From: Botryllus schlosseri
Taxonomy: Eukaryota
Assembly (NCBI GenBank): GCA_051294905.1
Contig: CM119372.1
Span: forward strand, 30,442,001-30,506,000
Length of the DNA stretch: 64,000 nucleotides
Direction: 5' to 3'
Part shown: one piece after another, positions 43,953-63,942 of the stretch
Numbering within the stretch: position 1 is the first letter of the stretch
Layout: each line of letters begins with the position of its first letter
The notes under the pieces: generated by a model
What the model saw: only the letters and a program-made list of their open reading frames with translations
Database searches by the model: none
What the model was told of the DNA's origin: nothing
Made by a program: the position numbers and the translations under genes

Positions 43953-45313
43953 AATTTTGAAAACACGTTGTAATAAGGAGATTGCATAAAGGACGTTTTT
44001 GTAACGCAGTCGCAGTAAGCAATGAATGACTATTTGTAAAAATCGAGAGTTTTTATACTGAATGCGACCCCATGTCCGTCTCTATGCAACTACCCGCGTA
44101 AGTTGAACCGTCTCATTTTATGTGTATTCGACCTAACTGGCGCCAGCTGCGCGCAAAATCCACCTGCAGCATGACTATCTGGGCGTGTTCTGCAGGTGCA
44201 ATATGGCTTTGAAAAGCCGCGGTTCATCTGTTGTTGTTGTTGTCATTCTGGTTTGTTGGTGGTATTCATGGTGTTTGTCGACCACAATGGTGATTTACAC
44301 TAGGCCGATATGCTTTATTTTGATTTCGTAGCTGCCGACTTGTAGCACGGGTACTGCTAGGCTTTTTTAAAACACTGCGTACGCCAATGAGGTGGCGAGG
44401 AAGAGCCTAGATAAACATACAATAGATCGGTAGGAATTCTGGAGTCAACCTCGGTCGGACTCGAACTCGCAACTCATTGGAGCCACATAATGTTAACCAA
44501 GTCACAAGTCAATCAAAATGTATTAGTTTTAACCAGAGTCATCTTCAATTCACCACGAAGTCAAGTGCTTGCATGCCTACGTCAAGCAATCACGAGCGCC
44601 ACTTGGATATCGCTGAAAATTGGTGTAGTGTTGGGCGTAACTGTAGTCCAGAGGTCTCAAACTTACGTGTGCTCGCGGGCCATTTCCTAGATTTTGATGA
44701 CGCCGCGGGCCGCAGCATCAATAATAGCGACATTCAAGATTTTTCATAGCGCCTGTCCATTTTCAACACAATTTCTCACGGTACCTATATTAAAATCAGA
44801 AAGCTCATTCACATAGGACTATTTTCATGTTGAATAAATTGGCCTAAAAAATATTCCACAGCATATAGGCCTAATTCAACAGTAGTATATAAGTGCTCAT
44901 CCAGCTCCGCTCCAATCAAATCGCAGCATTTGATCACGTGACTACTTTTGAATTTCAAATCAAACAGAGAAAAGCGCGCGAAAGAGTTATATCAATAGTG
45001 CTTCAATAGGGACAATGGGTGACAATATATGTCAATAACGGGCGTGACCATCATTGTATTGACAATGATTGTGTCAGCTGATTGCATAATGGGTGTTAAT
45101 GGGTGTGGGTTAGGAGAGCGAACCGTGACAGCACAATGGGGTGTGTGCTATTGAACGTTACGGTATTGTGCAATGGTTAATACCGTAGACAAGTCCAAAG
45201 CTAGTGATATTACACCATACACAGCTTTGATTACGTGGCAAATTTGTAATTATATATTTTTTTAGTATCACTACAAATCATTCTTATTCCTATATATATA
45301 TATATATATATGT

Positions 45314-45631
45314 ATGTCGCTTATGAGATTATACCATCAAAGAAATCAAGGATTGCAATTGACAGAGATGTCGAGAATTACAGCTTCTGATGTATACGAC
45401 ATTATAGAGAGGGTTCATTACAAGACTTGGAAAAGATTTGCTCGAGATCAACTTAAGTTAACAGACTTAGAAATTGCTGATTGTGAATACGCGGATCCCA
45501 AGAACTTAACTGAACAATGCTATCAAATGATACAAATATGGGTTCGTAAAAATGGTCGATGTGCTACAATTGACAGACTCGATGAATTAGCTAATAGTTG
45601 TATGTACGATTGTACTACCACACGGAATTAG
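45314..45631 (+). CDS. Stand-alone death-domain protein
   Basis: WKRFARDQLKLTDLEI..E...NLTEQCYQMIQIWVRKNGRCATIDRL matches the death-fold consensus WkxlArxLglsexeI..EqxyqmLxxW..G..AT; helix 6 appears short or spliced. Confidence 0.75.
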   Translation: MSLMRLYHQRNQGLQLTEMSRITASDVYDIIERVHYKTWKRFARDQLKLTDLEIADCEYADPKNLTEQCYQMIQIWVRKNGRCATIDRLDELANSCMYDCTTTRN

Positions 45632-45766
45632 CTCGAGAAGAAAAATGAGAACAGTCCATTTGATTTACCGTTATCAGATTTGAATGTCTCAATGAGTTTA
45701 CCGTTGGGAATTAACGCGCCAAAAGTAGTTATTTAAACACCACTACGAGTGAGCGGGACATGAGAA

Positions 45767-45934
45767 ATGGATATACTTCTGAGTGAAGACTCCGATATCG
45801 CGTTCTACGTGATATTATGCTCTTGCATTAAAACCTATTGCTGCATCAATATATACAAGAAGAAAAGAGATTCCGAGATTGCAGAAGCTTGCAACGACCT
45901 TAAAGCTGCTATCTGTAAAGTCTTCGGGCAATGA
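45767..45934 (+). CDS. 55-aa Cys-rich orphan (below ORF-track cutoff)
   Basis: MDILLSEDSDIAFYVILCSCIKTYCC...VFGQ*; stop overlaps the next ATG (ATGA). Confidence 0.45.
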   Translation: MDILLSEDSDIAFYVILCSCIKTYCCINIYKKKRDSEIAEACNDLKAAICKVFGQ

Positions 45935-46128
45935 AGCTAATATTCATAATATTCTTATTGATGCTAAATTGGAAATCAACGGATGCTCCGGAATTAATAT
46001 ACCCTTTCACCGTGAAATATCACGAAGAGGACTGCTTAGCTACTGAGCAAGAAGCAATGAAATTGATTTTACGTTATATCGCGGCATATTCTTTGACTAA
46101 CTGTACGCATATTGAAATAAACTATTGA
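45931..46128 (+). CDS. Small putative secreted orphan
   Basis: N-terminal MKLIFIIFLLML signal-peptide-like segment; coupled to the upstream ORF. Confidence 0.45.
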   Translation: MKLIFIIFLLMLNWKSTDAPELIYPFTVKYHEEDCLATEQEAMKLILRYIAAYSLTNCTHIEINY

Positions 46129-46337
46129 ATGATGATTTGCATTGTCTTGACTCGACTTTGTTAGGTTGTGCTTTCAGTGCCATATAGTGCTACTATAGCT
46201 TCGTGGTTCTGCTACAATTTTACTAACACTAAAGCTTTGAGAATAGAGAGAGACACAAATGTAGGATGAGATTTTATTATTCAGACCAAATATGAATTTA
46301 CCATTTATTTTCCATTAACACATATTCAACCAGTAAT

Positions 46338-46922
46338 TTAAAATTGCTGAGAATTTTGCATCCATCCCGCAGGGCGATGTCCGTATTGAGGTGGCGGTGG
46401 TAGCGGTGACACACCAGCATTCATTCCATAATAGGCGTTTTGTGGTGCTGCATTCATGCCATTAGTCGCGAAGTTCGCTTGAGGATGATCTTTCGATTGG
46501 ATTTGACCCGATTCTGCGATGAAGCGAGATGTTTCCTGCAGAATGAACGATAGCGGACCACAGTCAGGATCCTGTACCACATTACCTATATAAAGATATA
46601 GTTTATTAGTACAGAATTTCATTACATATTTACAATCTAACATACTTGGAGAATAAATTGTAAATTCGTCTGCTGGGTTAATCTGCTGGAAACATTCAAC
46701 ACCATCACGAGTATAGGTCGCGACGAGTCCCCCTTTGTGCGTGAAGACGGCTTTGTATCGCTGAATGGCGCCTGAAGTACGATGTAAGCGCAATTGATGA
46801 TGATCAATTACATCATCATTTATGCTTTCAAGTCGTAGCTTCGATATGTTATTAAAAACATATAGCTCCTTCCTCAATGGACCGCCGACAATTCTACTAT
46901 CACCTCTTATTGCGATGCTCAT
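46338..46922 (-). CDS. Hypothetical protein with C-terminal PPxY motif
   Basis: 194-aa clean ORF; SPLPPPPQY at 46382-46408. Confidence 0.6.
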   Translation of the reverse strand: MSIAIRGDSRIVGGPLRKELYVFNNISKLRLESINDDVIDHHQLRLHRTSGAIQRYKAVFTHKGGLVATYTRDGVECFQQINPADEFTIYSPSMLDCKYVMKFCTNKLYLYIGNVVQDPDCGPLSFILQETSRFIAESGQIQSKDHPQANFATNGMNAAPQNAYYGMNAGVSPLPPPPQYGHRPAGWMQNSQQF

Positions 46923-47000: not shown

Positions 47001-47354
47001 TTAAGAATGAGTCTTGTAATTTCTTTTACTTAGTAAAGCACAACGACTATTCACTTGTTCATGCTCAACCCATACATTATCACAATGACAGAGATTTTCG
47101 AATAGTTTTCCACACATATAGCATTTTGCTAAATTTTCGAACCCGAGATGAAAATAACCACATTCTGCTAATTGATAGGCACTACTGTTGAAATTTTCTT
47201 TGTAAGGTTCGAACGAACGTAATCTACGTTCAAAATTCATATTGAAAAACACAGCTTCGTTCTGCTTCGCATTTCGATTACAAATTTCATAAACGATATC
47301 ACCGACTTCATTCTTCATTGCCTGATGTGCACCTAACGGCTTAATAGACACCAT
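47001..47354 (-). CDS. Single-BIR (IAP-like) protein, no RING
   Basis: RLRSF, LAECGYF, and exact C-x2-C-x16-H-x6-C spacing (CYMC GKLFENLCHCDNVWVE H EQVNSR C). Confidence 0.88.
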   Translation of the reverse strand: MVSIKPLGAHQAMKNEVGDIVYEICNRNAKQNEAVFFNMNFERRLRSFEPYKENFNSSAYQLAECGYFHLGFENLAKCYMCGKLFENLCHCDNVWVEHEQVNSRCALLSKRNYKTHS

Positions 47355-47667: not shown

Positions 47668-48031
47668 CTATGAATTGTAACGAACGTTACTTTCGCGCAC
47701 TTCCATTTATTTGAGAGTTCAATTGGAGTTTTACTTTGTTTTTAATAAATTTGATAGAGGTTCGTTTTACTGTCTACTATTCATTGCTTTTCAAACACTC
47801 AATGCATTGTTTGCTCTACCAACAAAGCGAAAACGACGGTTGGGATTGTCTTTTGTTCGAAGGGGGCTGTTACTATCTATCAACAATTTCAAATCCCAAC
47901 GGTTAATGTTTGTCCGTTAGTGAGCGAACATTTTTCTTATGTGATTCTGGCGCGAACCATTTTGGTATAAGATTAGCCGAATGTGAAATGAGGTATCACT
48001 AAATCTGAGCGAATCAGTGAAAGTATTCGAG

Positions 48032-49621
48032 ATGTCTTTGCAAGTTGAAGTAATTATGGATGATGATAGTCAGCAGTTGCCAAGCAACCAATCAACCCGA
48101 GAAAGCAGTGACCATGCATTGAGTGTAGAAATTCCGAATCATATGAAATGTGATCAAATGGATAAAGATGATGAGGAACTCGTCGTTATGGATCGATACT
48201 TTAGACCCATAACGAAGATCCCATCTGCTAAAGAAGTTCTTCTGAAATCTTTGAGCGAAGAAGAATTTCGCGAACGCGTTGTCATACGTCAGATATGTCC
48301 CGCATTCAAAACTGATTCATCCCCATCAAAACAACAGCCTAATGACATCGAGCTAATTAGCAACGAGACCCAACTTAAGGATCAATTGATACCTCTGAGT
48401 CAATCAACACCAGTAGGTGAACAACCCGTTGAGACAGTGACTAGCGATCCGTCCCCTTCTGTCAATCATCAAGCTTCGGGACAAGCAGTAGGCAATCCCG
48501 ACACGGAAATGGATTTGTCTCTTGGTGCGGAGGCGATTGCCGAAAGTAGCGAGGCGCTAGGTGAAATTTCTCGTGATAGCAATGAGATCGCGAAGCAAAT
48601 CCTACTGCGACGTATAGAGAAGAGCACATCGCAAGTTACAGAGCAACCTACTTTTAGTGAGCTTGTCGCCGATTCCACTCATATCTCAAGTGGTTTTTCC
48701 GACTCTAATGTTGGTTCTATACCAAAGCCGAATATACCATCATCGCCAGATTCGTCAATAAGGATCTATCCTAGATATTGGATCCGACATGATCGCCCGG
48801 TCATTAACCCACCGCAATGGCATATAGGTGACACTACCAAAGCAGAACAGAAGTATGATGAGAAGAATCGCGTATTCATGCGTTGGCTAGTTGGATTTAG
48901 AGAGGCGACAGAAATACATGATGGTTATCTCATGTATAGATATCTGGAAGAAAATATTGCTGAAATACAATATGGCGGACTGAAACGGAGTCTCAATTTT
49001 CTTCGTGCCGCTCTGATTGTAGCTATCGGTGAAAGCTTGACTCATGAAAAATTACTTGCTCCACACTTCTTTCTGGAAGGGGATTGCCTTTCTGGAAAGG
49101 AAGTATTGCACGAAATGCTTTTCGGTAGTGAAACAGCAAATTATTTGCTGTCGAGTTTGGAAAATTTGAATGCTTTCAAATATTATGATGCTACAAAATG
49201 TGTTTCTGTGTTTCCCAACTGCGGAACGCTTTTCTTTGAAAATACTGCTTTACAGGAAACAATTCTGACTATACATCGTACAGCAGTGCAATGTGAATAC
49301 GGGATTATTAATCCATCTTGCTGCTTCATGCTTTGTGATAAACAAAATGGCTCTGACTTGATGACTGTCAAACATCCTATATCATTCAGGGCTAAAACGG
49401 TCATTGTAAAATTTGGAAGGGGGATTTACGCACCTTCTCTGGCCAGTTTCAACAAACATGCCCGTCGTGATGTTCTGTTCGATTTAATAAAGAGAACTAA
49501 AACTTCAAATATTAAAGAAGTGAATGGCTGTGTTGAGAAGGATCCCTTGGCTCAAGTACTGTATCTCAGAGCATCTAGCTTCAGAACCAGAAAAGAAAAA
49601 GCTGATAATGATAGTCTTTGA
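48032..49621 (+). CDS. Hypothetical protein: acidic disordered N-half, possible degenerate SF3/D5-like NTPase C-half
   Basis: Long clean ORF; FFLEGDCLSGKEVLHEMLFG resembles an SF3 Walker A context. Confidence 0.65.
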   Translation: MSLQVEVIMDDDSQQLPSNQSTRESSDHALSVEIPNHMKCDQMDKDDEELVVMDRYFRPITKIPSAKEVLLKSLSEEEFRERVVIRQICPAFKTDSSPSKQQPNDIELISNETQLKDQLIPLSQSTPVGEQPVETVTSDPSPSVNHQASGQAVGNPDTEMDLSLGAEAIAESSEALGEISRDSNEIAKQILLRRIEKSTSQVTEQPTFSELVADSTHISSGFSDSNVGSIPKPNIPSSPDSSIRIYPRYWIRHDRPVINPPQWHIGDTTKAEQKYDEKNRVFMRWLVGFREATEIHDGYLMYRYLEENIAEIQYGGLKRSLNFLRAALIVAIGESLTHEKLLAPHFFLEGDCLSGKEVLHEMLFGSETANYLLSSLENLNAFKYYDATKCVSVFPNCGTLFFENTALQETILTIHRTAVQCEYGIINPSCCFMLCDKQNGSDLMTVKHPISFRAKTVIVKFGRGIYAPSLASFNKHARRDVLFDLIKRTKTSNIKEVNGCVEKDPLAQVLYLRASSFRTRKEKADNDSL

Positions 49622-49783
49622 ATAATATGTTTTGCTTGTACGATTGTTATTTGCATGAACGATTGTTACCAATTCGAATTTTGTTTGCACCTTGACATTA
49701 TGACTGAAAAAAACTTGGCTGATGTATATATTATTTGCATGAACGATTGTCACTAATTCGAATTTTGTTTGCAGCTTAACATT

Positions 49784-50194
49784 ATGAATGATAACTTAGC
49801 CGATATAGCTGCATCCACCACTCAGAGAGACATGACACAAATTAGCGATATGTCGGCCTTCTATCAAAGTCTAATGGATCCACAGGAACCTTCACGAAAG
49901 CGTCCTCGTCAAGATATTGGTTCTTACTTCGAACACATGACGGATGATCATTTGAAAATGCAAGCGATGTGGAACCGCCTTATTTCGATGGAAGGATTCG
50001 AACAAGACTGGACAAAAAATTTTCTTGTCATTGCAAAAAACGTGATCAAAGATATCGAAAAACTGTTGTGTGACGATAAAACAGACTCGAATATTCGTGA
50101 TACTGAGATTGCTAGATTGGACAGAATTAAGTTCATGTTTCTGTACGGTTTAAACCAATCTAAATTGCGCTTGAGATATAATTTCGTTTTCTAG
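49784..50194 (+). CDS. Hypothetical protein with RKRPR NLS-like motif
   Basis: Clean 136-aa ORF preceded by an acceptor-like TTTGTTTGCAG. Confidence 0.55.
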   Translation: MNDNLADIAASTTQRDMTQISDMSAFYQSLMDPQEPSRKRPRQDIGSYFEHMTDDHLKMQAMWNRLISMEGFEQDWTKNFLVIAKNVIKDIEKLLCDDKTDSNIRDTEIARLDRIKFMFLYGLNQSKLRLRYNFVF

Positions 50195-55343: not shown

Positions 55344-55800
55344 GCTGTATTTTCCACCGCTACTAACAAAAGATGGATACGAAAGGAAATTTGACAAACA
55401 TATTGCCAAAATCAGAGACTCGGATTTGACTCGCGTGCAAAAACTAGCGCTTTACAAACACGGTATCAATGTCTTGAGAAACCTAAGAAAGAATGACGCG
55501 GCGATAAAAGCGCTCGCAAACGCTTCGTCACTCGACGATAAAAACGCGTCGCCGCCCGTCATTAAAGCAGACACAGCGCGCGCGCCACCATCTGATGACA
55601 CAAACGCGACGCCGGGGCCCCCGCACGCGTTTAATTGGAGCGTTACTAAACAGGAGGGAGATACTCCAAAGAAGAAAAAACCCAAGAAAAAAGCAAAGAA
55701 AAAGGTCGACCTCAAACCTCCGCTTAACTGGAAAGAACTCGATACTCCGCGTCAACAAAAGCCCAATCAACGCTACTTTGGAAAGCTATGGACAAACTAG
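55336..55800 (+). CDS. Conserved hypothetical basic protein
   Basis: Homolog of 4159..4497. Confidence 0.75.
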   Translation: MRELYFPPLLTKDGYERKFDKHIAKIRDSDLTRVQKLALYKHGINVLRNLRKNDAAIKALANASSLDDKNASPPVIKADTARAPPSDDTNATPGPPHAFNWSVTKQEGDTPKKKKPKKKAKKKVDLKPPLNWKELDTPRQQKPNQRYFGKLWTN

Positions 55801-56792
55801 ACTACTTCGATCCCAAAAAACCCAATTCTTATAGGGGTGCTTACCTACAGAAAGACAGCGAGTGGTTGAAGGGACAAGATAGTTATACCTATCACTTTCC
55901 CATTCGAAAAAGATTTAAACGTCGCCAAGTTGTTGTGTCAGGGATCGGAGCGCAGTTTCAAAGCGATTTAATCGACGTACAGTCTATTTCAAAATACAAT
56001 CGTGGATTTAGATATATTATTCTTATTATTGATGTTTTCTCCAAGTATGTGTGGATGATTCCGATTAAAAATAAATCGAGTGACAACATGATATCTGCTT
56101 TCAAAAAAGTTTTCAAAGAGAGCCTTCCATTAGTGCTACAGACAGACAGAGGTACAGAATACACGAGTCGAGCTTTTCAGAATTTTCTCAGAAAAAACAA
56201 GGTGCGGTACTTTTACACGAAAAGCGAATTGAAATCTTCGATTGCGGAAAGGGCTATCCGTAGTTTCCGTCAAATCTTCTACCGCTATTTCACGAAAAAT
56301 AACACCAGCAATTATATCGATGTGCTAGATGATATGGTCTATTCGTACAATCACACCAGACACCGCTCGTTAGGGATCCCTCCTAGTGAAGTTAATAGAC
56401 ATAATCAAGAAAGCATTTGGCAAAAAATGTATGGATTTCGCGACTCCAAACTACCCACTTTAGCGGTCGGGACCCCTGTACGCATCTCGAAAATTCGCAA
56501 TCTGTTTGAGAAGTCTAGTCGACCCAACTGGCAACCCGAGATATTTTACATTGTCAAAGCCATGAAAGGAGATCCGCCAACCTATCGCTTACGTGATTAC
56601 AATAACGAAATAATTGACGGACAATTTTACAGACAAGAAATTCAACCCGTTACTGAACCGCAAAAATGGCAAGTCGAAAAGATTATAAAGAGGCGACGGC
56701 GTGGTAAACGTAGTCAGTTTTTAGTGAAGTGGTTGAATTATGGACCGGAATTCAATACCTGGGTCGATCAAAAAGATATCGTCGAACCGTAA
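55788..56792 (+). CDS. Integrase with chromodomain
   Basis: QSDL, QTDRGTEY, AERAIR; WQVEKII..FLVKWLNY..NTWV. Confidence 0.95.
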   Translation: MDKLDYFDPKKPNSYRGAYLQKDSEWLKGQDSYTYHFPIRKRFKRRQVVVSGIGAQFQSDLIDVQSISKYNRGFRYIILIIDVFSKYVWMIPIKNKSSDNMISAFKKVFKESLPLVLQTDRGTEYTSRAFQNFLRKNKVRYFYTKSELKSSIAERAIRSFRQIFYRYFTKNNTSNYIDVLDDMVYSYNHTRHRSLGIPPSEVNRHNQESIWQKMYGFRDSKLPTLAVGTPVRISKIRNLFEKSSRPNWQPEIFYIVKAMKGDPPTYRLRDYNNEIIDGQFYRQEIQPVTEPQKWQVEKIIKRRRRGKRSQFLVKWLNYGPEFNTWVDQKDIVEP

Positions 56793-56952
56793 CTTTTATC
56801 AATTCATTGCTCAAGTTATAATTATACTGCTCATCGTGAGTTTTTCGCTGTATAATTTGAGTGTCGTGCAAGACAACAAAGAGCTTTGGGTGTCGCTGTT
56901 ATCTTCGTGTGTGGGATATATGTTACCGGCTCCAAAGATACCCAAACTATGA
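56740..56952 (+). CDS. Small two-TM protein
   Basis: Homolog of 5437..5646. Confidence 0.7.
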   Translation: MDRNSIPGSIKKISSNRNFYQFIAQVIIILLIVSFSLYNLSVVQDNKELWVSLLSSCVGYMLPAPKIPKL

Positions 56953-57779
56953 GTTATATTACGTTATTTTCCAATGCCTCCATGGACAGGTTTCCACAAA
57001 ATACAGCTGCGGTTTACACCAACGAACTAGACACCCCAAGAAATGTAGAAAGAAGCGAAGTCGCGTTGACTGAGATTGGCTTCCCAACCGATTTTAACGA
57101 ACGGATCGCAATCACAAATAACTACTACGGTTTCGACATTATGGGACCCAGTGAAGTCACAAGAAGATTGAAGTTCAAAATTGGTGAATATGAATCCGTA
57201 TATGACATGTTTAAATCATTGGAGAGCATTAATCCCGATGTGAAAGTCAAGTGTTTTCCTGAAAGTGATAACCTGACGGTTTCGATTCCACACAAAAACA
57301 TTGCAGCTAGTGCAAGACCGGGAGAGGATACGCGATATCGAATCGACACCAGAGAGTACGATTATACTGGAACACTTGAGCATCTAGAATTGGCGGTAGT
57401 TACCCTAACTCTCCTACGTTTCATATTGCCGAAGAATAGAGCAGACCTATCCGCATACTTTTTCACTGACAAGAGAATACATCTCAATTTTGATGTACGA
57501 CCCTTGTCGAAAATCGATTTCGTATACGTTCATTGCGACATCATTGAACCCCAAGAGTCTAGCGGTTCACTACAGCGTTTATTACGAGTTGTGAAAGTCG
57601 ATGGAGATAAGAAGGTGTTTTCAAAATATTACATAAAACCTTTCTTTCTTCCGCTAAGTATAAATAGATTGGAACGTGTAAAAATTTCCTTGCTGGATCA
57701 CAAAGGTGGTGAAATTCCGTTTCGAAGCGCTCCATCGAGCGCTGTACTTCAATTCCGAAAGCGCGGTATCGCACTATGA
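56949..57779 (+). CDS. Minor capsid protein 1
   Basis: Homolog of 5643..6452. Confidence 0.75.
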   Translation: MSYITLFSNASMDRFPQNTAAVYTNELDTPRNVERSEVALTEIGFPTDFNERIAITNNYYGFDIMGPSEVTRRLKFKIGEYESVYDMFKSLESINPDVKVKCFPESDNLTVSIPHKNIAASARPGEDTRYRIDTREYDYTGTLEHLELAVVTLTLLRFILPKNRADLSAYFFTDKRIHLNFDVRPLSKIDFVYVHCDIIEPQESSGSLQRLLRVVKVDGDKKVFSKYYIKPFFLPLSINRLERVKISLLDHKGGEIPFRSAPSSAVLQFRKRGIAL

Positions 57780-58525
57780 AATACATTCACATTAGCAGTT
57801 TGGAATCAGATTTTGTTCTCGAGCTAGCACGTCCGATTACAGGAAAATACGAACTGGGCCTAGCGGAGTTCTCGATTCGCAACGAGTTCCAACCTACTTT
57901 ACCTGCTTTCGACGCTCTGTTATGGCAATTTCAGGATGAGAAAACATCGCCTCTGATTCAAGTGGGAAGTAAAAATCATTATTTTTACCCCAAGGGTAAT
58001 TATTATGACTTCAAAAGTTTGATTGATAGAATCAATCGCACGCAGGACCAAGTATATATTAACCAGCTAGGAAGTTCTAGTGGTATGTTAGTCATTCCAC
58101 CTTACAAATCGGGTGCGTTTCCTAATTTCCTGAAGAATCCAACCGGAGTCAGAAATCCGGTTTTCGTGTATGGAAAGCTTAAGAAGAAAAAGCTGCTAGG
58201 AGGGAATTATTTAACTTCAGAGATCACTCTGAGGGATTCCATTACGCCTATCACCAATTTATTAATTTATACCGATCTCATTCGACCGCAATCAGTCGGC
58301 GACACGAAAGCTCCGCTATTACGAAACATCCCCATTACGAGTAGTGTCAATGAATATCAACATCATATATTCGAAAAAATATACTTTTTCCCTATGATTA
58401 CGGAAGACGCTCGTCGAATTCAGATTAGTATCAAAGACGATAAAGGTACGGGTATAAATCTGAAGGGGTCCATGATTGATATCACACTTGCTTTACGTCA
58501 TCATGAGAGCACATTACTGTTGTGA
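57776..58525 (+). CDS. Minor capsid protein 2
   Basis: Homolog of 6449..7171. Confidence 0.75.
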   Translation: MKYIHISSLESDFVLELARPITGKYELGLAEFSIRNEFQPTLPAFDALLWQFQDEKTSPLIQVGSKNHYFYPKGNYYDFKSLIDRINRTQDQVYINQLGSSSGMLVIPPYKSGAFPNFLKNPTGVRNPVFVYGKLKKKKLLGGNYLTSEITLRDSITPITNLLIYTDLIRPQSVGDTKAPLLRNIPITSSVNEYQHHIFEKIYFFPMITEDARRIQISIKDDKGTGINLKGSMIDITLALRHHESTLLL

Positions 58526-58871
58526 TCGCGATGCCTTTCAACAATACTATCGTGTGCAAAGTGGTAATGGCATAAACTATTTTCGAGGACGAGTGCAAAG
58601 AGGACACGGTTTAGGAAATCTCTTTCGTAGTTTGGGACGAAGTGTTGTACCATTGATATCAAAAGGGGCGAAAGCTCTCGGCAAACAACTACTCCATACA
58701 GGAGCAGAAGTAGCTTCTGACGTATTGCGTGGACAAAACGTCGGTGAAAGCTTCAAAATAAGAGGAAAACAAGCAGCTAGCAAAGCTCTTGACAACTTCC
58801 TAGGCAAGAGAAAGGCACCTAGAAAAAAGACCACGAAACGGAAAAAGCGGCGACGGGACATTTTCGATTAA
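58503..58871 (+). CDS. Basic core/membrane-active protein (QRGHGLG)
   Basis: Homolog of 7149..7520. Confidence 0.7.
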   Translation: MRAHYCCDRDAFQQYYRVQSGNGINYFRGRVQRGHGLGNLFRSLGRSVVPLISKGAKALGKQLLHTGAEVASDVLRGQNVGESFKIRGKQAASKALDNFLGKRKAPRKKTTKRKKRRRDIFD

Positions 58872-58921: not shown

Positions 58922-60199
58922 ATGACGGAGCTAATTCACGCGAAATCTGCCGAAGGCGTACATCCTAGCTTGGATCTTTTTCAACTCCCACCTACCCAAA
59001 CAAGCGTGGAGAAGAAACGGATCATTAAGATTCCACCTGTGTCGGACAACGCAAGCGTGATTATTTACCGCTATGAAGGCTGTGACGATTTTATTGATTT
59101 AAGCGAATCCTATTTTTTATTTCGCTTGAAACTATTGAAAGGCGATGCGGATCTAGCTGCCACGGACAGCATTGGAGTTGTGAATAACATTCTTGATTCT
59201 CTAATTTCTCAACTTCACATCAAAGTCGGGAACCATACCCTGAAACAAGACGTGAAGCTACAATGTTATTCAGCCTACTTACACTATCTGTTCACACCTC
59301 ACGACGTGCAAGAGACAACGCTTCTTACACAAAGATGGGTCAAGGACACAGAGAAGCAATTAGATGATTCGGGCCTAGGCAATGATGCGGCTAACAAAGG
59401 TCATAAGGCGAGAAATTTGCCGTATGCCGGGAGCAAAGTCGTTGAAATTCGCGGTAAAATACATCATGGGTTGTGTTTGCAAGACCGCTATATTTTGGAC
59501 GAGGTTCCGTTAGAGTTCGAATTAACATTGAATCCGAAAAGTTTCTTTCTGTTTGGAGCCGCTACCAGCAATTTCAAAATCATCAAAAAAGAATTGCACC
59601 TATGTGGAGTGCGGGTAACCGAAGATGTAAAATCTGCCTTGATGGTAGACGCACCGGCTAGGTATCCCTTTATGGACATGAAGCTGCTGACTCGAACTTT
59701 TGCGGCTAACACCACTCAAATCGATATTGGTAATCTGTATTCGGGAACCCTGCCGACACGTTTGATTATAGCAATGGTGAAAACCGAGGCATTCCAAGGA
59801 GCATTAGATAAGAACCCATATAATTTTATTCATAATAAAATGAATCGGGTTGAATTGAAAGTAAATGGTTTCCTTATGCCAGAGGGTGGCTACGAACTTG
59901 ATTTTGAAAACAATCATTATTCCGAGGCCTACCTAAATCTCATTCAATCTATGGGTGCCATCGAACGACAAAAAGGCTTGATTTCACCTTCCGAGTTCGC
60001 AAATGGATACACGCTCCTGGCGTATAATTTGCGAGGTGACGATTTAGATGACTGCTTCGAGCTGCAGAAAAGTGGAACGATCAGTCTTCGAATCACCTTT
60101 CCTGCGGCAGGTGTTGAGAGCGAAACGACACTGCTGTGCTTTATGGAATTTCAAAAAATACTGGAAATAAGCCAAGCTCGCACGGTGACCGTGATATGA
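58922..60199 (+). CDS. Major capsid protein
   Basis: 425 aa, colinear with 7570..8847. Confidence 0.88.
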   Translation: MTELIHAKSAEGVHPSLDLFQLPPTQTSVEKKRIIKIPPVSDNASVIIYRYEGCDDFIDLSESYFLFRLKLLKGDADLAATDSIGVVNNILDSLISQLHIKVGNHTLKQDVKLQCYSAYLHYLFTPHDVQETTLLTQRWVKDTEKQLDDSGLGNDAANKGHKARNLPYAGSKVVEIRGKIHHGLCLQDRYILDEVPLEFELTLNPKSFFLFGAATSNFKIIKKELHLCGVRVTEDVKSALMVDAPARYPFMDMKLLTRTFAANTTQIDIGNLYSGTLPTRLIIAMVKTEAFQGALDKNPYNFIHNKMNRVELKVNGFLMPEGGYELDFENNHYSEAYLNLIQSMGAIERQKGLISPSEFANGYTLLAYNLRGDDLDDCFELQKSGTISLRITFPAAGVESETTLLCFMEFQKILEISQARTVTVI

Positions 60200-60657
60200 A
60201 CGGACAAGAAATAGATGAAATATTGTATAGTTACCATGCTACGAAACAACACTATCTAGGGAATTTCCCTATTGATCAACTCCCTCAGCGCCCAAAACCT
60301 CCTTATTCAATTGTGATCAATTATGATGAAAGTCACAAGGAAGGTAGTCACTGGGTTTGCATATATGCTGATCAATATGAAACCCATTTTCACGATAGTC
60401 TGGGTATCACTCCATTCAGGATTGAGATTGCGAGTTTCCTTGATCCCGAAAATTATACTAGCTCAATAAAACCATTACAGCATGAAAGGTCAGACGCTTG
60501 TGGAGCTCATGCAATTGCATATATCGTGAAACGCTCTACTGGTATGAGCACACTACAGTATTTGGATCACTTCGGTGATGATCGAAAAGAGAACGACGAT
60601 ATCGTAGTGGACTTCGTTAGAATCTTGAAATGGGAGCAACTAGTTTCACCATCATAG
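60196..60657 (+). CDS. Adenain-like protease
   Basis: GSHW, HDSLG, LQ..SDACG; ATGA overlap with the MCP stop. Confidence 0.92.
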   Translation: MNGQEIDEILYSYHATKQHYLGNFPIDQLPQRPKPPYSIVINYDESHKEGSHWVCIYADQYETHFHDSLGITPFRIEIASFLDPENYTSSIKPLQHERSDACGAHAIAYIVKRSTGMSTLQYLDHFGDDRKENDDIVVDFVRILKWEQLVSPS

Positions 60658-60686
60658 AATACTTTGGAGATGATGAGAAGGCCTAC

Positions 60687-60947
60687 ATGAAAGTCCAAGG
60701 AAAAATTATTGTCATGAATGCAAATCGTATTCATAGAATTTCTTTCGAGCCGTTTCACATACGCATTTACCCGCATGATAACGAAGTTACAATTTTCCGC
60801 GGGTCTGATTGGATCCCAGTGCGTTTTCCTAAAAATTGTATGTATATAGATGTGTTGTCGAAGCATAGAATTATTCGTCGTAACCGCGGTGAACTTGTCG
60901 TTTTTCGTAGACTAAAATTATGGGAATTTTTGAGAAATCGCTTTTAA
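60687..60947 (+). CDS. Orphan, beta-strand-rich
   Basis: Clean ORF followed by TAATAAA. Confidence 0.5.
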   Translation: MKVQGKIIVMNANRIHRISFEPFHIRIYPHDNEVTIFRGSDWIPVRFPKNCMYIDVLSKHRIIRRNRGELVVFRRLKLWEFLRNRF

Positions 60948-61014
60948 TAAATTCGTGTGTATTCATCGGAGTTATATATAAGTGGTTATTGCTCGGGATC
61001 TAGTCAGTGTCATC

Positions 61015-61755
61015 ATGAATGCGCTTATAGTATCGATGTGTTATCGCGGAAAGCCGCACCATGTCGAAAATGAAGGAACGTTACAAGACATTCAGATTAT
61101 GACAGATATCTTAGTACAGAAATTCAAATTCAAGCCTGAAGATATCAAAGTGTTGCGTGAAGAGCAAGCCACTCTTGGAAATTTTTCCAGAGAGCTTCAA
61201 ACGATGGCCGATAGTAGCGCCAAGATAAACTTCATATATTTCGTCGGTCACGGATTTTCATGTCCAAATAACACAAAAGAAAATGATCCTGAAGCTCGCG
61301 ATTCCGGATTTGTATTTTATGATAGGCATCTACTCGATGATGATATGTGTGAGCTATTAAAAAGCTTTCGTAAAGATACAAAAAACCTACTCATGTTTGC
61401 GCAGTGTTATAGTGGTAACTCTGCCGATTTGAAATTTCATTTACGAGAAGACGCTGCTTCGCAAGCACTCAAACGCAAACGAGACGTAAAATCCAAAACT
61501 GTTCTCATAAGTGCAGTTAGTGACGATCAAATCAGTTGGTGTTTTGAAGACGGTAGTGCTTTTGCAAAGAATTTCAGAACCGTCATACGTGAACACGACG
61601 AAATCAAATTCTTCGATCTTATGCGTAAATTGCGACAACTAGATAAGAGACAAAAGTGTTCGATATCATCAAGCTTCAAATTGGATGAACACGATCATCT
61701 CATTCGAAAAAGAAGTTTCAGTTGGATAAAATCTCAATGGAAGAAATCGAAATAA
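61015..61755 (+). CDS. Metacaspase-like cysteine protease (C14)
   Basis: ALIV..Y...GTLQDI..M...L, T..N, YFVGHG (His), D.DE-like loop, LLDDD, FAQCYSG..DL (Cys), ISAVSDDQ.S, GSAF, Q...SSS follow the metacaspase motif order. Confidence 0.8.
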   Translation: MNALIVSMCYRGKPHHVENEGTLQDIQIMTDILVQKFKFKPEDIKVLREEQATLGNFSRELQTMADSSAKINFIYFVGHGFSCPNNTKENDPEARDSGFVFYDRHLLDDDMCELLKSFRKDTKNLLMFAQCYSGNSADLKFHLREDAASQALKRKRDVKSKTVLISAVSDDQISWCFEDGSAFAKNFRTVIREHDEIKFFDLMRKLRQLDKRQKCSISSSFKLDEHDHLIRKRSFSWIKSQWKKSK

Positions 61756-61840
61756 TAACTATCGTTGCAACCGCGCTGTTATTTCTGGAATTCTTATTAT
61801 ATACGCTATTTTGCTGTGGAGAAGAATGTGAACGTAAATC

Positions 61841-62182
61841 ATGACTATGGCTCGCATTTGTATTGGTCCCCTACGCTTGAGTAGTAATGGAGATCGTAGC
61901 TATTATGAAAAAACAATTGTATTACCGAAAGTGAGATCTATCACTATTCCTTTCTCATGTGAAATAATGTATCGTACCAATAAGATCGTAGTGAAGAAAC
62001 TGCATGTTCCTCACTACGGTAAGATTGAATCTCCGACAATCACTGTCTGCAAAGACAAACATTACTGTTTACCGCGTACCTGTCCTATTCTTATAGAATT
62101 TAAAGGGAATGCGATCGTTGTAAAAAATATAATCGTATTCGAAGCGTTACACAACGCGCGATTTTATGATGCTTGTTACTAG
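61841..62182 (+). CDS. Orphan, beta-strand-rich
   Basis: Clean 113-aa ORF followed by AATAAA. Confidence 0.5.
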   Translation: MTMARICIGPLRLSSNGDRSYYEKTIVLPKVRSITIPFSCEIMYRTNKIVVKKLHVPHYGKIESPTITVCKDKHYCLPRTCPILIEFKGNAIVVKNIIVFEALHNARFYDACY

Positions 62183-62266
62183 TTTGATATGTCTGTAATA
62201 AAATCACAAAACAACTACGGATCCTCATTCGTGTTCTAGTCAGATACAGCATCAATAGAAAAGTCG

Positions 62267-62337
62267 TGGAGACTACGGGAATTGAACCCGTATCTTCTAT
62301 TTGCAAGACAGATACTCTACCATTGAGCTAAGTCCCC
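62267..62337 (-). tRNA. tRNA-Ala (anticodon UGC)
   Basis: GGGGACT TA GCTC AATGGTA GAGT A TCTGT CTTGCAA ATAGA AGAT ACGGG TTCAATT CCCGT AGTCTCC A: all four stems pair, G3:U70 alanine determinant, A73, A- and B-boxes, TTTT terminator 5 nt downstream, no encoded CCA. Confidence 0.93.
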
Positions 62338-62446
62338 ATTCAGACGAATAACAACGCAACCAGACGTTGATTTTTGTTATTTATTACAAGAACAATACGG
62401 AATGTATAATGCAATTCCACGCTACTCGCGGTGGATTAAAACAACA

Positions 62447-62926
62447 CTATTTTTCTTGCTGGGTGACTTGCGTATCTTCCATTGCATGTCTACGGGTATA
62501 TTGAGTAGCTAGTTGGAAATAACGTTCCTTATTTTTTAAATACATTTCCGCACTCTCTTGATCCATCGGATCATAAGGGTTTGGTGAAGCGAGCAATGAA
62601 CGTATTGATATCAGTAGAGTGGACGTTGTCATCGCTGGTGACCATTCCTTCTGTAAAATATCGACACATATGGTACCTTTACAGCTTACGTTAGGATGGA
62701 ATATCCGTGTTTCAAATCGCATTTTAGGAGGCTTGAATGGATACTCGGTAGAATATTCGATTGATAATCTGAACACACCACCTTCGTAGGGTGTTCCGTT
62801 TGGTCCTTGGATCGTTGCCCACCAACTATACATATTCTTTTCATCGAATGGTCCTGCTCGGATAGCTTCGTAAGCATTCTGCTTAAATTTTGCTTGTTCA
62901 TATATCAAACGCTTCAAAGCACGCAT
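62447..62926 (-). CDS. Ubiquitin-conjugating enzyme E2 (UBE2D/Ubc4-5-like), intronless
   Basis: MRALKRL, WWATIQGP.GTPYEGGVF, YPFKPPK, IFHPN..GTICVDIL (catalytic Cys), WSPA, PNP.DP; an upstream ATG at 62959 is also possible. Confidence 0.93.
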   Translation of the reverse strand: MRALKRLIYEQAKFKQNAYEAIRAGPFDEKNMYSWWATIQGPNGTPYEGGVFRLSIEYSTEYPFKPPKMRFETRIFHPNVSCKGTICVDILQKEWSPAMTTSTLLISIRSLLASPNPYDPMDQESAEMYLKNKERYFQLATQYTRRHAMEDTQVTQQEK

Positions 62927-63092
62927 GCCTATCGAATGATAGTATTCGAACTGTCGCACTTGCTTTCAAATAAATTATAATTCAATCTAATTATACATGT
63001 AAATAGAAATAGGTTACAGAATAATGAATGATATGATTAATGTATGAAATGACATGCGTCGCGCATTTCAAATCTACAACAAAAAAAAAATA

Positions 63093-63419
63093 TTAATGTA
63101 TGAGATGAGATGCGTCGCTCATTTCTAATCTGTAACAATTTTTCATGAATAGGCTGTTTAATTCCACGGCGGTTCCTTGTTTGATAGTAATACACTTTCC
63201 ATTTATGTGGACATCTTCCTCATGAATCTTCATTGATTTTTTTTCGTTGTCTTCGTCACGTATGATCACCCACGTATATCCTTTACGGCGTTTTATTATG
63301 AACTGCTGCTCCAATTTTATCGTCGCTACACCCGTTACTATTATACTCTTTGAAGTTTGGTCCATTGTAATATTTGTTGGAGATTCGAATTTGACATCGT
63401 TAATCACTATTCGTCCCAT
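63093..63419 (-). CDS. Orphan, beta-strand-rich
   Basis: Clean 108-aa ORF transcribed inward from the right terminal region. Confidence 0.5.
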   Translation of the reverse strand: MGRIVINDVKFESPTNITMDQTSKSIIVTGVATIKLEQQFIIKRRKGYTWVIIRDEDNEKKSMKIHEEDVHINGKCITIKQGTAVELNSLFMKNCYRLEMSDASHLIH

Positions 63420-63490
63420 CGTCGCTCAATTTCGTATTGAATGGCTTAGCATCAAATTTGTGACTTAAATAGTCGCCTAAACTTCTTCTA

Positions 63491-63942
63491 CAATCATTGT
63501 CAATACAATGATGATCACACCATCGCGGAATAAACATATATATATGATTGCAAACTTGTCACGTGATCAAAGCTATGTATGGTGCAATATCGCTAGGTTA
63601 TTACCCATTGTGCAATAACGGTCACACAACTCTTTCGCGCGCTTTTCTCTGTTTGATTTGAAATTCAAAAGTGGTCACGTGATTGGAGTGGGTCTAAATA
63701 CCCACTTTGACGCCTTAATCAAAACAACAGCAACGAACGCTAGGCGAGATGGGCAGAAGACTGCAAATCCTGAACAATGGAGGGTGTAACACCAGAACGA
63801 GCGAAAATATACTTCGAACATTTGGACAAGCACTGGGAGAGGAACTGGGATGGAGCTTGCGATGGGATGGCTGTATAGGAATAATTGGACTGTATATAGG
63901 AATAAGAATGATTTGTAGTGATGCTAAAAAAATATATAATTA
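63491..63942. repeat. Imperfect, block-shuffled inverted repeat of the left terminal region of element 2
   Basis: 63628-63683 = rc of 44933-44988; 63540-63597 ~ rc 45200-45255; 63491-63520 ~ rc 45042-45071; 63893-63942 ~ rc 45248-45297. Confidence 0.85.

What the first reader, a model, noticed from the sequence alone, without database searches (positions are those of the whole stretch)
44881..63690. Endogenous Polinton virus carrying a multi-gene cell-death/ubiquitin control kit plus a tRNA
Seen: around a complete virion and replication core sit a death-domain-only protein, a BIR-only protein, a PPxY protein, a metacaspase-like protease, a UBE2D-like E2 and a tRNA-Ala, all apparently uninterrupted and without stops. 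Established: death domains nucleate receptor/adaptor death and immune complexes; BIR domains bind caspases and IAP antagonists; UBE2D/UbcH5 is a main E2 partner of IAP RING ligases; PPxY recruits Nedd4-family HECT ligases. Such sets are typical of large DNA viruses (baculo-, pox-, asfarviruses), not of ~19-kb Polintons as usually described. Inference: a functionally coherent host-manipulation system that blocks or redirects host cell death, supporting a true viral lifestyle. I cannot verify novelty without a search.
Basis: partly seen in the sequence, partly recalled or inferred. Interest (0 to 1): 0.86.

Follow-up and report, generated by a model that had tools for sequence, protein, structure and literature searches.

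The report
Polinton virus element with cell-death genes
An almost intact virus-like Polinton element sits in an animal-type genome and carries, beside its capsid and replication genes, small copies of host cell-death and ubiquitin genes, of which at least two and a tRNA gene are kept by selection in related elements.

Summary
Between short inverted ends (core 44933-44988 / 63628-63683) lies an ~18.8-kb Polinton/adintovirus-like element. Its core has a divergent protein-primed PolB (one frameshift), an A32-type ATPase, an rve+chromodomain integrase, a double-jelly-roll capsid protein and a protease.

Cargo in the two arms:
- **Left arm:** death-domain-only protein, BIR-only protein.
- **Right arm:** C14 metacaspase-like protease, tRNA-Ala(UGC), UBE2D-like E2.
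- All have significant family matches and intact key residues.

New here:
- Short contigs from other sequencing runs carry diverged relatives with the same gene order: o141-o534-BIR-PPxY-ORF on the left, and protease-o105-C14-o113-tRNA-Ala on the right.
- dN/dS is 0.22 for BIR and 0.10-0.11 for C14. These genes are therefore long-standing, selected genes of the lineage, not passengers.

Not shown:
- Conservation of the E2 and the death domain.
- The PPxY motif lies in a 7-residue indel that a relative lacks.

IAP and Bcl2 homologues in adintoviruses, and accessory arms flanking Maverick cores, are already published. I found no report of a Polinton C14 protease, E2 or death domain. A role in cell death is inferred from domains only.

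Verdict: a real new variant of a known kind, of moderate interest.

The parts
44881..44988 (.). Left terminal region. It starts with AGTAGT at 44881. An imperfect inverted repeat runs from about 44891, with a 56-nt core at 44933-44988.
   Evidence: The core is 98% complementary to 63628-63683. The outer part matches only with an 18-nt indel and many mismatches. (AGT)2 is the 5' end motif reported for vertebrate Mavericks (PMC8097293).
45314..45631 (+). Death-domain-only protein, 105 aa
   Evidence: Pfam Death E 1.4e-10. Best solved relatives are FADD death domains. Conservation in relatives is untested because their contigs stop short.
46338..46922 (-). 194-aa ORF with a C-terminal PPQY motif and no known domain
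   Evidence: No Pfam hit. A homologue at 66% identity sits at the same position in L011/L012, where it lies in two frames. The PPxY stretch is absent there.
47001..47354 (-). BIR-only protein, 117 aa, no RING
   Evidence: Pfam BIR E 1.3e-10. Best solved relatives are NAIP and XIAP BIRs. A 74%-identical 113-aa orthologue, P0047, lies in syntenic contigs. dN/dS is 0.22 and the zinc ligands are kept.
48017..49621 (+). 534-aa ORF of unknown function (o534)
   Evidence: No Pfam hit. A 521-aa homologue is in L011, with about 47-56% identity and dN/dS 0.38.
49769..50194 (+). 141-aa ORF of unknown function (o141)
   Evidence: A homologue at 79-81% identity is in L011, dN/dS 0.13.
50375..54245 (+). [quoted passage not shown] It is broken once, by one frameshift.
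   Evidence: It is 63% identical to the open PolB of window copy 2, in two frames. ExoI, ExoII and motifs A, B and C are present. It has no Pfam, PHROG or PDB sequence hit.
54277..54897 (+). Genome-packaging ATPase (A32/FtsK type)
   Evidence: Pfam Pox_A32 E 1.4e-10.
54933..55238 (+). 101-aa basic ORF, conserved in Polintons
   Evidence: 54% identical to window copy 2 and 40% identical to the Patella Polinton L004.
55336..55800 (+). 154-aa ORF
   Evidence: 37% identical to window copy 2.
55788..56792 (+). Retrovirus-type integrase with a C-terminal chromodomain
   Evidence: Pfam rve E 5e-13 and Chromo E 4e-11.
56886..57779 (+). 297-aa virion-module ORF, a candidate minor capsid protein and a paralogue of the next ORF
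   Evidence: 53% identical to copy 2. It also gives cross-hits to the neighbouring ORF and to L004. The fold was not tested.
57776..58525 (+). 249-aa virion-module ORF, a paralogue of the previous one
   Evidence: 45-52% identical to copy 2 and L001.
58476..58871 (+). 131-aa basic ORF
   Evidence: 66-70% identical in copy 2 and in L001-L003.
58922..60199 (+). Double-jelly-roll major capsid protein, 425 aa
   Evidence: AF2 model with pLDDT 75. Top Foldseek hits are the Sputnik, mavirus and PBCV-1 capsid proteins, E 1e-14 to 1e-16. A relative in Patella is named major capsid protein.
60196..60657 (+). Cysteine protease at the adenain position, 153 aa from its ATG
   Evidence: 52-80% identical in all relatives. 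Weak hit to the ASFV S273R protease, E 0.036. dN/dS is 0.10.
60630..60947 (+). 105-aa ORF (o105)
   Evidence: Present after the protease in L001 and L005-L008 at 48-79% identity. dN/dS is 0.19.
60982..61755 (+). C14 peptidase, metacaspase-like, 257 aa
   Evidence: Pfam Peptidase_C14 E 3.6e-13. Arabidopsis metacaspase-4/9 hits have the His and Cys aligned. Homologues at 89, 63 and 50% identity occupy the same position. The dyad is invariant. dN/dS is 0.10-0.11.
61841..62182 (+). 113-aa ORF (o113)
   Evidence: 69% identical in L005/L006. dN/dS is 0.38.
62266..62337 (-). tRNA-Ala, anticodon UGC, with G3:U70
   Evidence: ARAGORN and Rfam, 73 bits. The relative L005 has its own tRNA-Ala(UGC) at the same place and strand, with 7 of 72 differences and the stems kept.
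62447..62959 (-). UBE2D-like ubiquitin-conjugating enzyme. The likely ATG start is at 62926, giving 159 aa.
   Evidence: Pfam UQ_con E 1.7e-46. UBE2D2/D3 are the best solved relatives, with HPN and the active-site Cys present. The closest homologue found is only 60% identical, on a contig without Polinton genes.
63093..63419 (-). 108-aa ORF of unknown function (o108)
   Evidence: Open ORF. No significant family match and no relative found.
63628..63717 (.). Right terminal region. The 56-nt core is 63628-63683, and an imperfect match runs on to about 63707. The outermost bases do not mirror the left end.
   Evidence: There is no similarity between the flanks beyond the ends. No target-site duplication above chance was found.

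Best explanation
This is an integrated, nearly intact Polinton/Maverick of the adintovirus type, about 18.8 kb long (about 44881 to 63717). It lies in an animal-type genome.

Structure (shown):
- The conserved core runs PolB, ATPase, integrase, virion module, capsid protein, protease.
- Two accessory arms flank the core, as is usual for these elements.
- In this lineage the arms hold stripped-down versions of cellular regulators: a FADD-like death domain without an effector domain, a single BIR without a RING, a metacaspase-like C14 protease with an intact His-Cys dyad, a UBE2D-like E2, and a tRNA-Ala gene.
- The BIR gene, the C14 gene and the tRNA occupy the same positions in diverged related elements and evolve under purifying selection.

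Mechanism (inferred):
- During replication the single-domain proteins would act as decoys or adaptors. The death domain would bind death-domain receptors or adaptors without passing the signal on. The BIR would bind caspases or IAP antagonists.
- The E2, together with the OTU-like domain on PolB, would bias host ubiquitin signalling.
- The C14 protease would cleave host or viral substrates.
- The net effect would be control of the timing of host cell death and innate signalling.
- I do not know what the tRNA does. It may serve translation, act as a Pol III unit, or mark a recombination boundary.
For: Element and core:
- Inverted ends enclose all genes.
- rve+chromodomain integrase, A32 ATPase.
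- Double-jelly-roll capsid fold.
- PolB motifs.
- Colinearity with a second Polinton in the window and with a Patella Polinton.

Cargo identity and intact key residues.

Conservation, right arm:
- The order protease-o105-C14-o113 is found in contigs L005-L008, from three sequencing runs. L005 also has its own tRNA-Ala(UGC) after o113, at the focal position.
- C14 dN/dS is 0.11 at dS 0.54 and 0.10 at greater distance. This equals the viral protease at 0.10.

Conservation, left arm:
- The order o141-o534-BIR-PPxY-ORF is found in L011/L012.
- BIR dN/dS is 0.22.

Integrated state: host-type genes MGAT2, Mn-SOD and SLX9 lie 15-23 kb to the left.

Precedent:
- Adintovirus IAP, Bcl2 and gasdermin homologues (PMC8502044).
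- Accessory regions flanking Maverick cores (PMC8097293).
- Viral C14 proteases and a viral E2 in large DNA viruses (PMC10583209).
Against: - No functional or expression data exist. The cell-death reading rests on domain names.
- E2: the closest homologue is only 60% identical and is not on a recognisable Polinton contig. The relative L005 loses similarity to the focal element right after the tRNA, and its last 51 codons there are not E2-like.
- Death domain: no relative was found, and the related contigs end before it.
- The PPxY motif is not conserved.
- The C14 model was too poor to confirm the fold.
- A more distant Polinton (Patella, L004) has none of these genes in its right arm. Its left arm lies outside the fetched locus and was not seen. 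The second copy in the window has lost the right arm.
- PolB has one frameshift and the outermost ends do not match, so this copy may be inactive.
- Linkage of the left-arm and right-arm cargo on one relative is not shown. The related contigs are only 1.4-4 kb long.
Confidence: 0.6

Rival explanations
1. The accessory genes are real and selected but do not form one system. Each serves a separate purpose unrelated to blocking apoptosis. The single BIR could act like survivin in cell division. The C14 protease could process virion or replication proteins. The E2 could target innate-immune signalling, as described for the asfarvirus E2. The death domain could feed into NF-kB-type signalling.
For: - The genes sit in two different arms, on different strands and with separate intergenic regions.
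- Relatives differ beyond the tRNA, which suggests modular turnover.
- Survivin is among the BIR hits, though weaker than NAIP and XIAP.
- Some ascovirus caspases are needed for replication but not for apoptosis, and the role of giant-virus metacaspases is unknown (PMC10583209).
Against: Four of the five protein domains belong to families whose best-known roles meet in death and ubiquitin signalling. The BIR is closer to NAIP and XIAP BIRs (E 1e-8 to 1e-12) than to survivin (E about 4e-4). Neither point is decisive.
Confidence: 0.27
2. The element, or its cargo, serves the host as an inducible suicide module. A C14 protease with death-domain and BIR regulators would kill the cell on superinfection by a larger virus, as integrated virophages and Polinton-like viruses protect protist populations.
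For: - The element carries a potential executioner-type protease with an intact dyad beside putative regulators.
- Related elements persist in several lineages with selection on these genes.
- Defence by integrated relatives is known in protists (abstracts of 10.1101/068312 and PMC12220804).
Against: No partner virus, sensor or trigger is visible. Selection on the genes is equally expected for a selfish virus. The genes lie inside a mobile element with capsid genes, not in a fixed host locus.
Confidence: 0.08
3. Part of the cargo, namely the E2, the downstream 108-aa ORF and perhaps the death domain, is a recent passenger capture in this one copy and has no function for the element.
For: - No close relative of the E2 or the death domain was found.
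- Similarity to the relative L005 stops at the tRNA.
- The more distant Patella element has none of these genes in its right arm, the only arm seen.
Against: - Both ORFs are open with intact key residues.
- Both are intronless and far diverged from cellular homologues: about 55% to UBE2D and about 30% to FADD. That argues against recent capture.
- Both lie inside the inverted ends.
- The related contigs are too short to show absence.
Confidence: 0.05

Closest known systems
Adintoviruses, animal Polintons (Starrett et al. 2021, PMC8502044)
   Same: - OTU-PolB, integrase, adenovirus-like virion module and adenain-position protease.
- Accessory genes that include homologues of the anti-apoptotic proteins IAP and Bcl2, and of gasdermin.
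- Predicted tRNA genes are drawn in related mid-size viruses.
- The focal PolB lacks a Pfam PF03175 match, like their divergent Beta class.
   Different: That paper's text mentions no C14 protease, E2 or death domain. Here the BIR is a stand-alone 117-aa protein. The Beta-class hallmark accessory genes (gasderminX, cupiennin) gave no family match to the focal ORFs in the Pfam scans.
Vertebrate Mavericks (Barreat and Katzourakis 2021, PMC8097293)
   Same: - Two accessory regions flank a conserved core.
- Size is about 17 kb, with inverted ends of 46-1447 bp.
- The (AGT)2 5' end motif is seen at 44881.
   Different: All core genes here are on one strand. The matching 3' motif and a 6-bp target duplication were not found. 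The content of the accessory regions is not detailed in that paper's text.
Asfarvirus set of host-control genes: E2 pI215L, IAP-like protein, Bcl-2 homologue, S273R protease (as cited in PMC10583209)
   Same: A DNA virus encodes its own E2 and cell-death regulators. The focal protease gives a weak hit to S273R.
   Different: That genome is about ten times larger and the virus is unrelated. The focal E2 is closest to cellular UBE2D. No sequence comparison with the viral E2 was made.
Virus-encoded C14 proteases: ascovirus caspases and giant-virus metacaspases (PMC10583209)
   Same: A viral C14 protease with a His-Cys dyad. In ascoviruses it reshapes cell death for transmission.
   Different: The focal protein is short (257 aa). 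It is closest to plant metacaspases and a bacterial caspase-like protein at low identity. It sits in a Polinton. I found no report of that in the library.
Cargo-carrying Mavericks of nematodes and insects (10.1101/2022.07.12.499685; 10.1101/2025.02.07.637071)
   Same: Polintons move non-core genes as cargo.
   Different: The cargo there is toxin-antidote or fusogen-type genes and transposons, not death-domain, BIR, C14 or E2 genes.

Membership tests
Polinton / Maverick (adintovirus-like) | [quoted passage not shown] | tested here: met
   ExoI, ExoII and motifs A, B and C are present. It is 63% identical to the open PolB of window copy 2, and tblastx links it to the Patella Polinton, whose PolB matches PF03175. 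There is no direct Pfam, PHROG or PDB hit. The gene has one frameshift.
Polinton / Maverick (adintovirus-like) | Retrovirus-like (rve) integrase | tested here: met
   Pfam rve E 5e-13, plus chromodomain E 4e-11.
Polinton / Maverick (adintovirus-like) | Double-jelly-roll major capsid protein | tested here: met
   AF2 model with pLDDT 75. Foldseek top hits are the Sputnik, mavirus and PBCV-1 capsid proteins, E 1e-14 to 1e-16.
Polinton / Maverick (adintovirus-like) | A32/FtsK-type packaging ATPase | tested here: met
   Pfam Pox_A32 E 1.4e-10.
Polinton / Maverick (adintovirus-like) | Adenain-like cysteine protease | tested here: inconclusive
   The position after the capsid gene is conserved and dN/dS is 0.10. 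There is only a weak hit to the ASFV S273R clan-CE protease, E 0.036, and no Pfam hit.
Polinton / Maverick (adintovirus-like) | Minor (penton) capsid protein | not tested
   Two paralogous ORFs, 56886-58525, occupy the expected position. No fold test was made.
Polinton / Maverick (adintovirus-like) | Terminal inverted repeats | tested here: met
   A 56-nt core at 98%. The outer part is imperfect.
Polinton / Maverick (adintovirus-like) | 5-6 bp target-site duplication | tested here: inconclusive
   6-mer matches around the ends are no more frequent than chance, and none fits symmetrical ends.
IAP / BIR proteins | BIR fold with CX2CX16HX6C zinc site | tested here: met
   Pfam BIR E 1.3e-10. The pattern is present in the focal protein and in the relative.
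IAP / BIR proteins | RING E3 domain of classical IAPs | tested here: not met
   The protein is 117 aa with a BIR only. It is BIR-only, not a full IAP.
IAP / BIR proteins | Peptide-binding groove for caspases or IAP antagonists | not tested
   No structure or residue-level comparison was made.
UBC-fold E2, UBE2D subfamily | UBC domain with HPN motif and catalytic Cys | tested here: met
   Pfam UQ_con E 1.7e-46. The alignment to UBE2D2 shows HPN and the Cys.
UBC-fold E2, UBE2D subfamily | Closest to UBE2D among E2 classes | tested here: met
   The top 60 solved hits are UBE2D1-3 or their yeast and worm equivalents. No phylogeny was made.
Peptidase C14 (metacaspase-like) | His-Cys catalytic dyad in the p20-like region | tested here: met
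   Both residues align with the dyad of Arabidopsis metacaspase-4/9 and are invariant in four homologues.
Peptidase C14 (metacaspase-like) | Caspase-haemoglobinase fold | tested here: inconclusive
   The Pfam match covers 207 of 233 profile positions, but the AF2 model has pLDDT 43. No fold search was made.
Peptidase C14 (metacaspase-like) | Basic (Arg/Lys) versus Asp specificity pocket | not tested
   This needs a reliable structure or a residue-level alignment to characterised enzymes.
Death domain | Death-domain profile match | tested here: met
   Pfam Death 41.6 bits against a cut-off of 22.6. FADD, TNFR1 and RIPK1 death domains are the best solved hits.
tRNA-Ala | Cloverleaf, UGC anticodon, G3:U70 identity pair | tested here: met
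   ARAGORN and Rfam, 73 bits. G3:U70 is kept in the focal gene and in the relative. Expression cannot be tested here.
PPxY late-domain proteins | PPxY motif conserved among relatives | tested here: not met
   The motif is present in the focal ORF. It lies in a 7-residue stretch that the L011/L012 homologue lacks.

The most novel reading that the evidence does not exclude
A lineage of animal Polintons carries its own death switch: a metacaspase-like executioner-type protease inherited together with single-domain death-domain and BIR regulators, an E2 and a tRNA. The element would itself time the death of the infected cell, either for release or as an abortive response to a co-infecting virus. 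That would be the first C14 protease and the first death-domain protein assigned to this virus class.
Probability: 0.15. Interest if true: 0.8.

Novelty: new variant of a known kind. Interest (0 to 1): 0.55.

Why it matters
Polintons are thought to be ancestors of many eukaryotic DNA viruses, yet free particles have hardly been seen in animals. Genes that only make sense inside an infected, signalling cell, and that are kept by selection over long divergence, are indirect evidence that these elements live as viruses and not only as transposons. A Polinton-borne C14 protease beside BIR and death-domain proteins would also show something further. The host-control genes known from very large DNA viruses would then be present in genomes of under 20 kb. 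That gives a compact system in which to study how viruses borrow and trim cell-death parts. The gain over published work is moderate, because IAP, Bcl2 and gasdermin homologues in adintoviruses are already reported.

Tried and rejected
- **Exact look-ups of focal proteins:** nothing was on record, so the host could not be named and no other copies of this very element were found. Runs SRR25569773-84 and SRR32906214 hold the relatives, but no paper in the library cites the three of these accessions I searched for.
- **IMG/VR scan with the capsid protein:** no relative.
- **IMG/VR scan with the E2:** only giant-virus genome bins at 44-49% identity, no closer than cellular UBE2D.
- **JGI metagenome scan with the death domain:** nothing.
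- **AF2 model of the C14 protease from four sequences:** pLDDT 43, so I made no fold search with it.
- **PolB:** no Pfam, PHROG or PDB sequence match. Its identity rests on motifs and on relatives.
- **Target-site duplication search:** matches at chance level only.
- **Longer inverted ends:** the flanks outside the core show no similarity above shuffles.
- **E2 end in the 202-nt tail of L005:** I first thought I saw one, but tblastn and the three reading frames do not support it.
- **Codon compensation by the tRNA:** alanine codon use is the same in the element and in the neighbouring host-type ORFs.
- **Paralogy among the small ORFs o105, o113 and o108:** none found.
- **Patella Polinton L004:** its right arm has no death-domain, BIR, E2 or C14 gene.

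Full report
**What is there**

A 56-nt inverted repeat, 98% complementary, lies at 44933-44988 and 63628-63683 and encloses everything.

The core genes all lie on the + strand, in this order:
- a large PolB gene, 50375-54245
- an A32-type packaging ATPase (Pfam E 1.4e-10)
- two small ORFs
- an rve integrase with a chromodomain (E 5e-13 and 4e-11)
- two paralogous virion-module ORFs
- a small basic ORF
- a 425-aa capsid protein
- a cysteine protease

The capsid protein was modelled from an 11-sequence alignment (pLDDT 75). Its best structural matches are the major capsid proteins of Sputnik, mavirus and PBCV-1, with E 1e-14 to 1e-16. The double-jelly-roll assignment is therefore tested, not assumed.

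The PolB has no Pfam, PHROG or PDB sequence match. It does carry ExoI, ExoII and motifs A, B and C, plus an OTU-type Cys-loop motif near its N-terminus. The missing PF03175 match together with the OTU motif fits the divergent Beta PolB class of adintoviruses (PMC8502044).

**State of the copy**

A second Polinton, about 66% identical in DNA, lies at window 1-9299 and serves as an internal comparator. Against its open PolB, the focal PolB aligns over its whole length in two frames. That is one frameshift, with no other break. It could equally be a true mutation or an assembly error. All other core ORFs match the comparator in length and order, and all cargo ORFs are open.

- Outside the 56-nt core the two ends match only loosely, with an 18-nt indel.
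- The left end begins with AGTAGT at 44881. That is the 5' motif described for vertebrate Mavericks (PMC8097293). The right end does not mirror it.
- The flanks beyond the ends share nothing.
- Candidate target duplications are no more frequent than chance.

I place the element at about 44881 to 63707-63717. On any reading of the ends the cargo is inside.

**The cargo, gene by gene**

- **Death domain (105 aa).** Pfam 41.6 bits against a cut-off of 22.6. The best solved relatives are FADD, TNFR1 and RIPK1 death domains. No other domain is present.
- **BIR (117 aa).** Pfam E 1.3e-10. It is closest to NAIP and XIAP BIRs, with survivin weaker. The zinc ligands are intact and there is no RING.
- **C14 protease (257 aa).** Pfam E 3.6e-13. 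The best solved relatives are Arabidopsis metacaspases 4 and 9 and a bacterial caspase-like protein. His and Cys align with the catalytic dyad.
- **E2.** Pfam E 1.7e-46. The top 60 solved hits are all UBE2D-type, and HPN and the catalytic Cys are present. The likely start is the ATG at 62926.
- **tRNA-Ala(UGC).** Rfam 73 bits, with a G3:U70 pair.
- **"PPxY protein".** This is a 194-aa ORF without a known domain, carrying one PPQY near its C-terminus.

**Relatives and selection: the main new result**

The capsid protein has few relatives in 5.8 billion proteins. The closest are 69% and 47% identical, on short contigs assembled from public runs. The nearest named one, at 29%, is from the limpet Patella caerulea.

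Right arm. Searching with the C14 protease gave three homologues at 89, 63 and 50% identity. The contigs of the first two (L005-L008) show the order capsid-protease-o105-C14-o113 (or as much of it as each contig spans), exactly as in the focal element; the contig of the third (L010, 1.4 kb) matches only the C14 gene.
- L005 is 81% identical in DNA to focal 59612-62337.
- L005 has its own tRNA-Ala(UGC) at the same place and on the same strand. It differs at 7 of 72 positions, and the stems and G3:U70 are kept.

Left arm. An exhaustive profile-free search with the BIR protein gave one close hit: a 113-aa BIR-only protein, 74% identical. Its contigs, L011 and L012, come from two runs and carry homologues of o141, o534, BIR and the PPxY-ORF in the focal order and orientation.

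Nei-Gojobori estimates against the closest relatives:

| Gene | dN/dS | Note |
|---|---|---|
| C14 | 0.11 | dS 0.54; 0.10 against the 63% relative |
| Viral protease | 0.10 | core gene, for comparison |
| o141 | 0.13 | |
| o105 | 0.19 | |
| BIR | 0.22 | |
| o113 | 0.38 | |
| o534 | 0.38 | |

The C14 dyad is invariant in all four homologues. The BIR and C14 genes and the tRNA are therefore stable, selected components of a family of related elements. They are not passengers of this one copy.

**What could not be shown**

- **E2.** The closest homologue is 60% identical. It lies on a 2.4-kb contig with no Polinton gene and no tRNA. Similarity between L005 and the focal element stops exactly at the tRNA. 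The 202 nt that follow in L005 end an ORF that is not E2-like. Either the segment between the tRNA and the right end is a variable module, or the short-read contig is chimeric at a repeated tRNA sequence. I cannot tell which.
- **Death domain.** The related contigs stop about 270 nt short of it, and a metagenome scan found nothing.
- **PPxY.** The motif sits in a 7-residue proline-rich stretch that the L011/L012 homologue lacks. That homologue also lies in two frames, meaning one frameshift. I treat the late-domain idea as weak.
- **Linkage.** Left-arm and right-arm cargo on one relative is not shown, although run SRR25569773 holds both kinds of contig.
- **Other Polintons.** The second Polinton in the window has tandem repeats in place of the right arm. 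The Patella element has no such genes in its right arm.
- **C14 model.** The AF2 model of the C14 protease was unusable, with pLDDT 43.
- **tRNA and codon use.** Alanine codon use does not differ between the element and the neighbouring ORFs, so I have no evidence that the tRNA compensates codon bias.

**Host and setting**

To the left of the element lie single-ORF genes for MGAT2, Mn-SOD and SLX9, together with several repeats. This is an animal-type nuclear genome. I could not name the species.

**How it most likely works**

Shown: an integrated adintovirus-like Polinton with two accessory arms; cargo with intact key residues; conservation and purifying selection for BIR, C14 and the tRNA.

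Inferred from what these families do elsewhere:
- A death domain without an effector domain, and a BIR without a RING, are the shapes expected of decoys or adaptors for death-receptor/adaptor complexes and for caspases or IAP antagonists.
- A UBE2D-type E2, together with the OTU-like domain on PolB, would let the element push host ubiquitin signalling in both directions.
- The C14 protease could cleave host or viral targets. In ascoviruses a viral caspase reshapes cell death for transmission, while the role of giant-virus metacaspases is unknown (PMC10583209).

I give about 0.6 to the overall statement. Identity of the element and its cargo is near certain. A shared role in timing cell death and innate signalling is about even odds. 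The main rival, at about 0.27, is that the genes are selected but serve separate purposes.

**Comparison with what is known**

- Adintovirus homologues of IAP, Bcl2 and gasdermin are published, and tRNA genes are drawn in related mid-size viruses (PMC8502044).
- Cargo in nematode and insect Polintons is known.
- E2 enzymes and C14 proteases are known in much larger DNA viruses.
- In the full-text library no paper joins Polintons with caspase, metacaspase, ubiquitin-conjugating enzyme or death domain in this sense. Absence from this library is not proof of absence.

I therefore rate the finding a new variant of a known kind. The conserved, selected C14 protease is its most original element.

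One script printed the lengths of the two pieces, which indirectly locates the break. My working notes at the start also referred to those ORF bounds. This report gives only the outer bounds and the count. I built or saved no joined, repaired or consensus sequence, and I did not use the consensus lines printed by the alignment tools.

Noticed in passing
window 1-11767: A second, divergent Polinton (about 66% DNA identity, capsid protein 69% identical) runs off the left edge of the window. PolB is open as far as it is visible, and the same core order runs up to the protease (8844-9299). Instead of the o105-C14 arm it is followed by about 2.4 kb of tandem repeats with a period of about 500 bp (9389-11767).
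   Followed up: partly
window 45247-45296 and 63893-63942: A 50-nt segment just upstream of the death-domain gene recurs, inverted and 98% identical, about 180-210 nt outside the right end of the element. A neighbouring 57-nt segment (45201-45257) matches 63540-63596 inside the right end. GATCACGTGAC-like motifs recur in these subterminal pieces. Their order differs between the two ends, and I have no explanation.
   Followed up: partly
L005 2651-2924 versus window 62266-62560: Similarity between the focal element and its 81%-identical relative ends exactly at the tRNA-Ala gene. The tRNA may mark a module boundary or recombination point, or the short-read contig may be chimeric there.
   Followed up: partly
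window 50375-54245 and 28-3102: The PolB proteins carry an OTU-type Cys-loop motif and a weak C2H2 zinc-finger match in the N-terminal part. They also give weak matches to an endonuclease family (phrog_13076) and to the RAP domain in the polymerase part. This suggests an inserted nuclease-like domain.
   Followed up: no
window 15436-19311, with related pieces at 34156-35848: A large foldback structure has inverted arms of 707, 612 and 168 nt at 98% complementarity. It is probably another transposable element, with related fragments about 17 kb away.
   Followed up: no
window 38898-39905 and 44596-44655: A tandem array with a 177-bp period lies at 38898-39905. A 50-60-nt piece of its unit recurs, inverted, about 230 nt to the left of the Polinton's left end.
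   Followed up: no
window 40370-43952: Two minus-strand ORFs lie just left of the element. One is 309 aa with Ulp1-protease and PHD-finger matches. The other is 798 aa with no family match and internal 79-nt repeats. They may belong to another mobile element.
   Followed up: no
window 47476-47650 and 49647-49794: Short direct repeats (46 nt twice, 64 nt twice) lie in two intergenic regions of the left arm: between the diverging BIR and o534 genes, and just upstream of and into the start of o141. They may be promoter elements.
   Followed up: no
window 21568-30934: The host-type genes MGAT2, Mn-SOD and SLX9 each read as a single uninterrupted ORF. The host is either intron-poor or these are retrocopies.
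   Followed up: no
window 48017-49621 and L002 811-1254: The C-terminal part of the 534-aa left-arm ORF is 25% identical over 150 residues to an ORF in the virion module of a more distant relative (L002).
   Followed up: no
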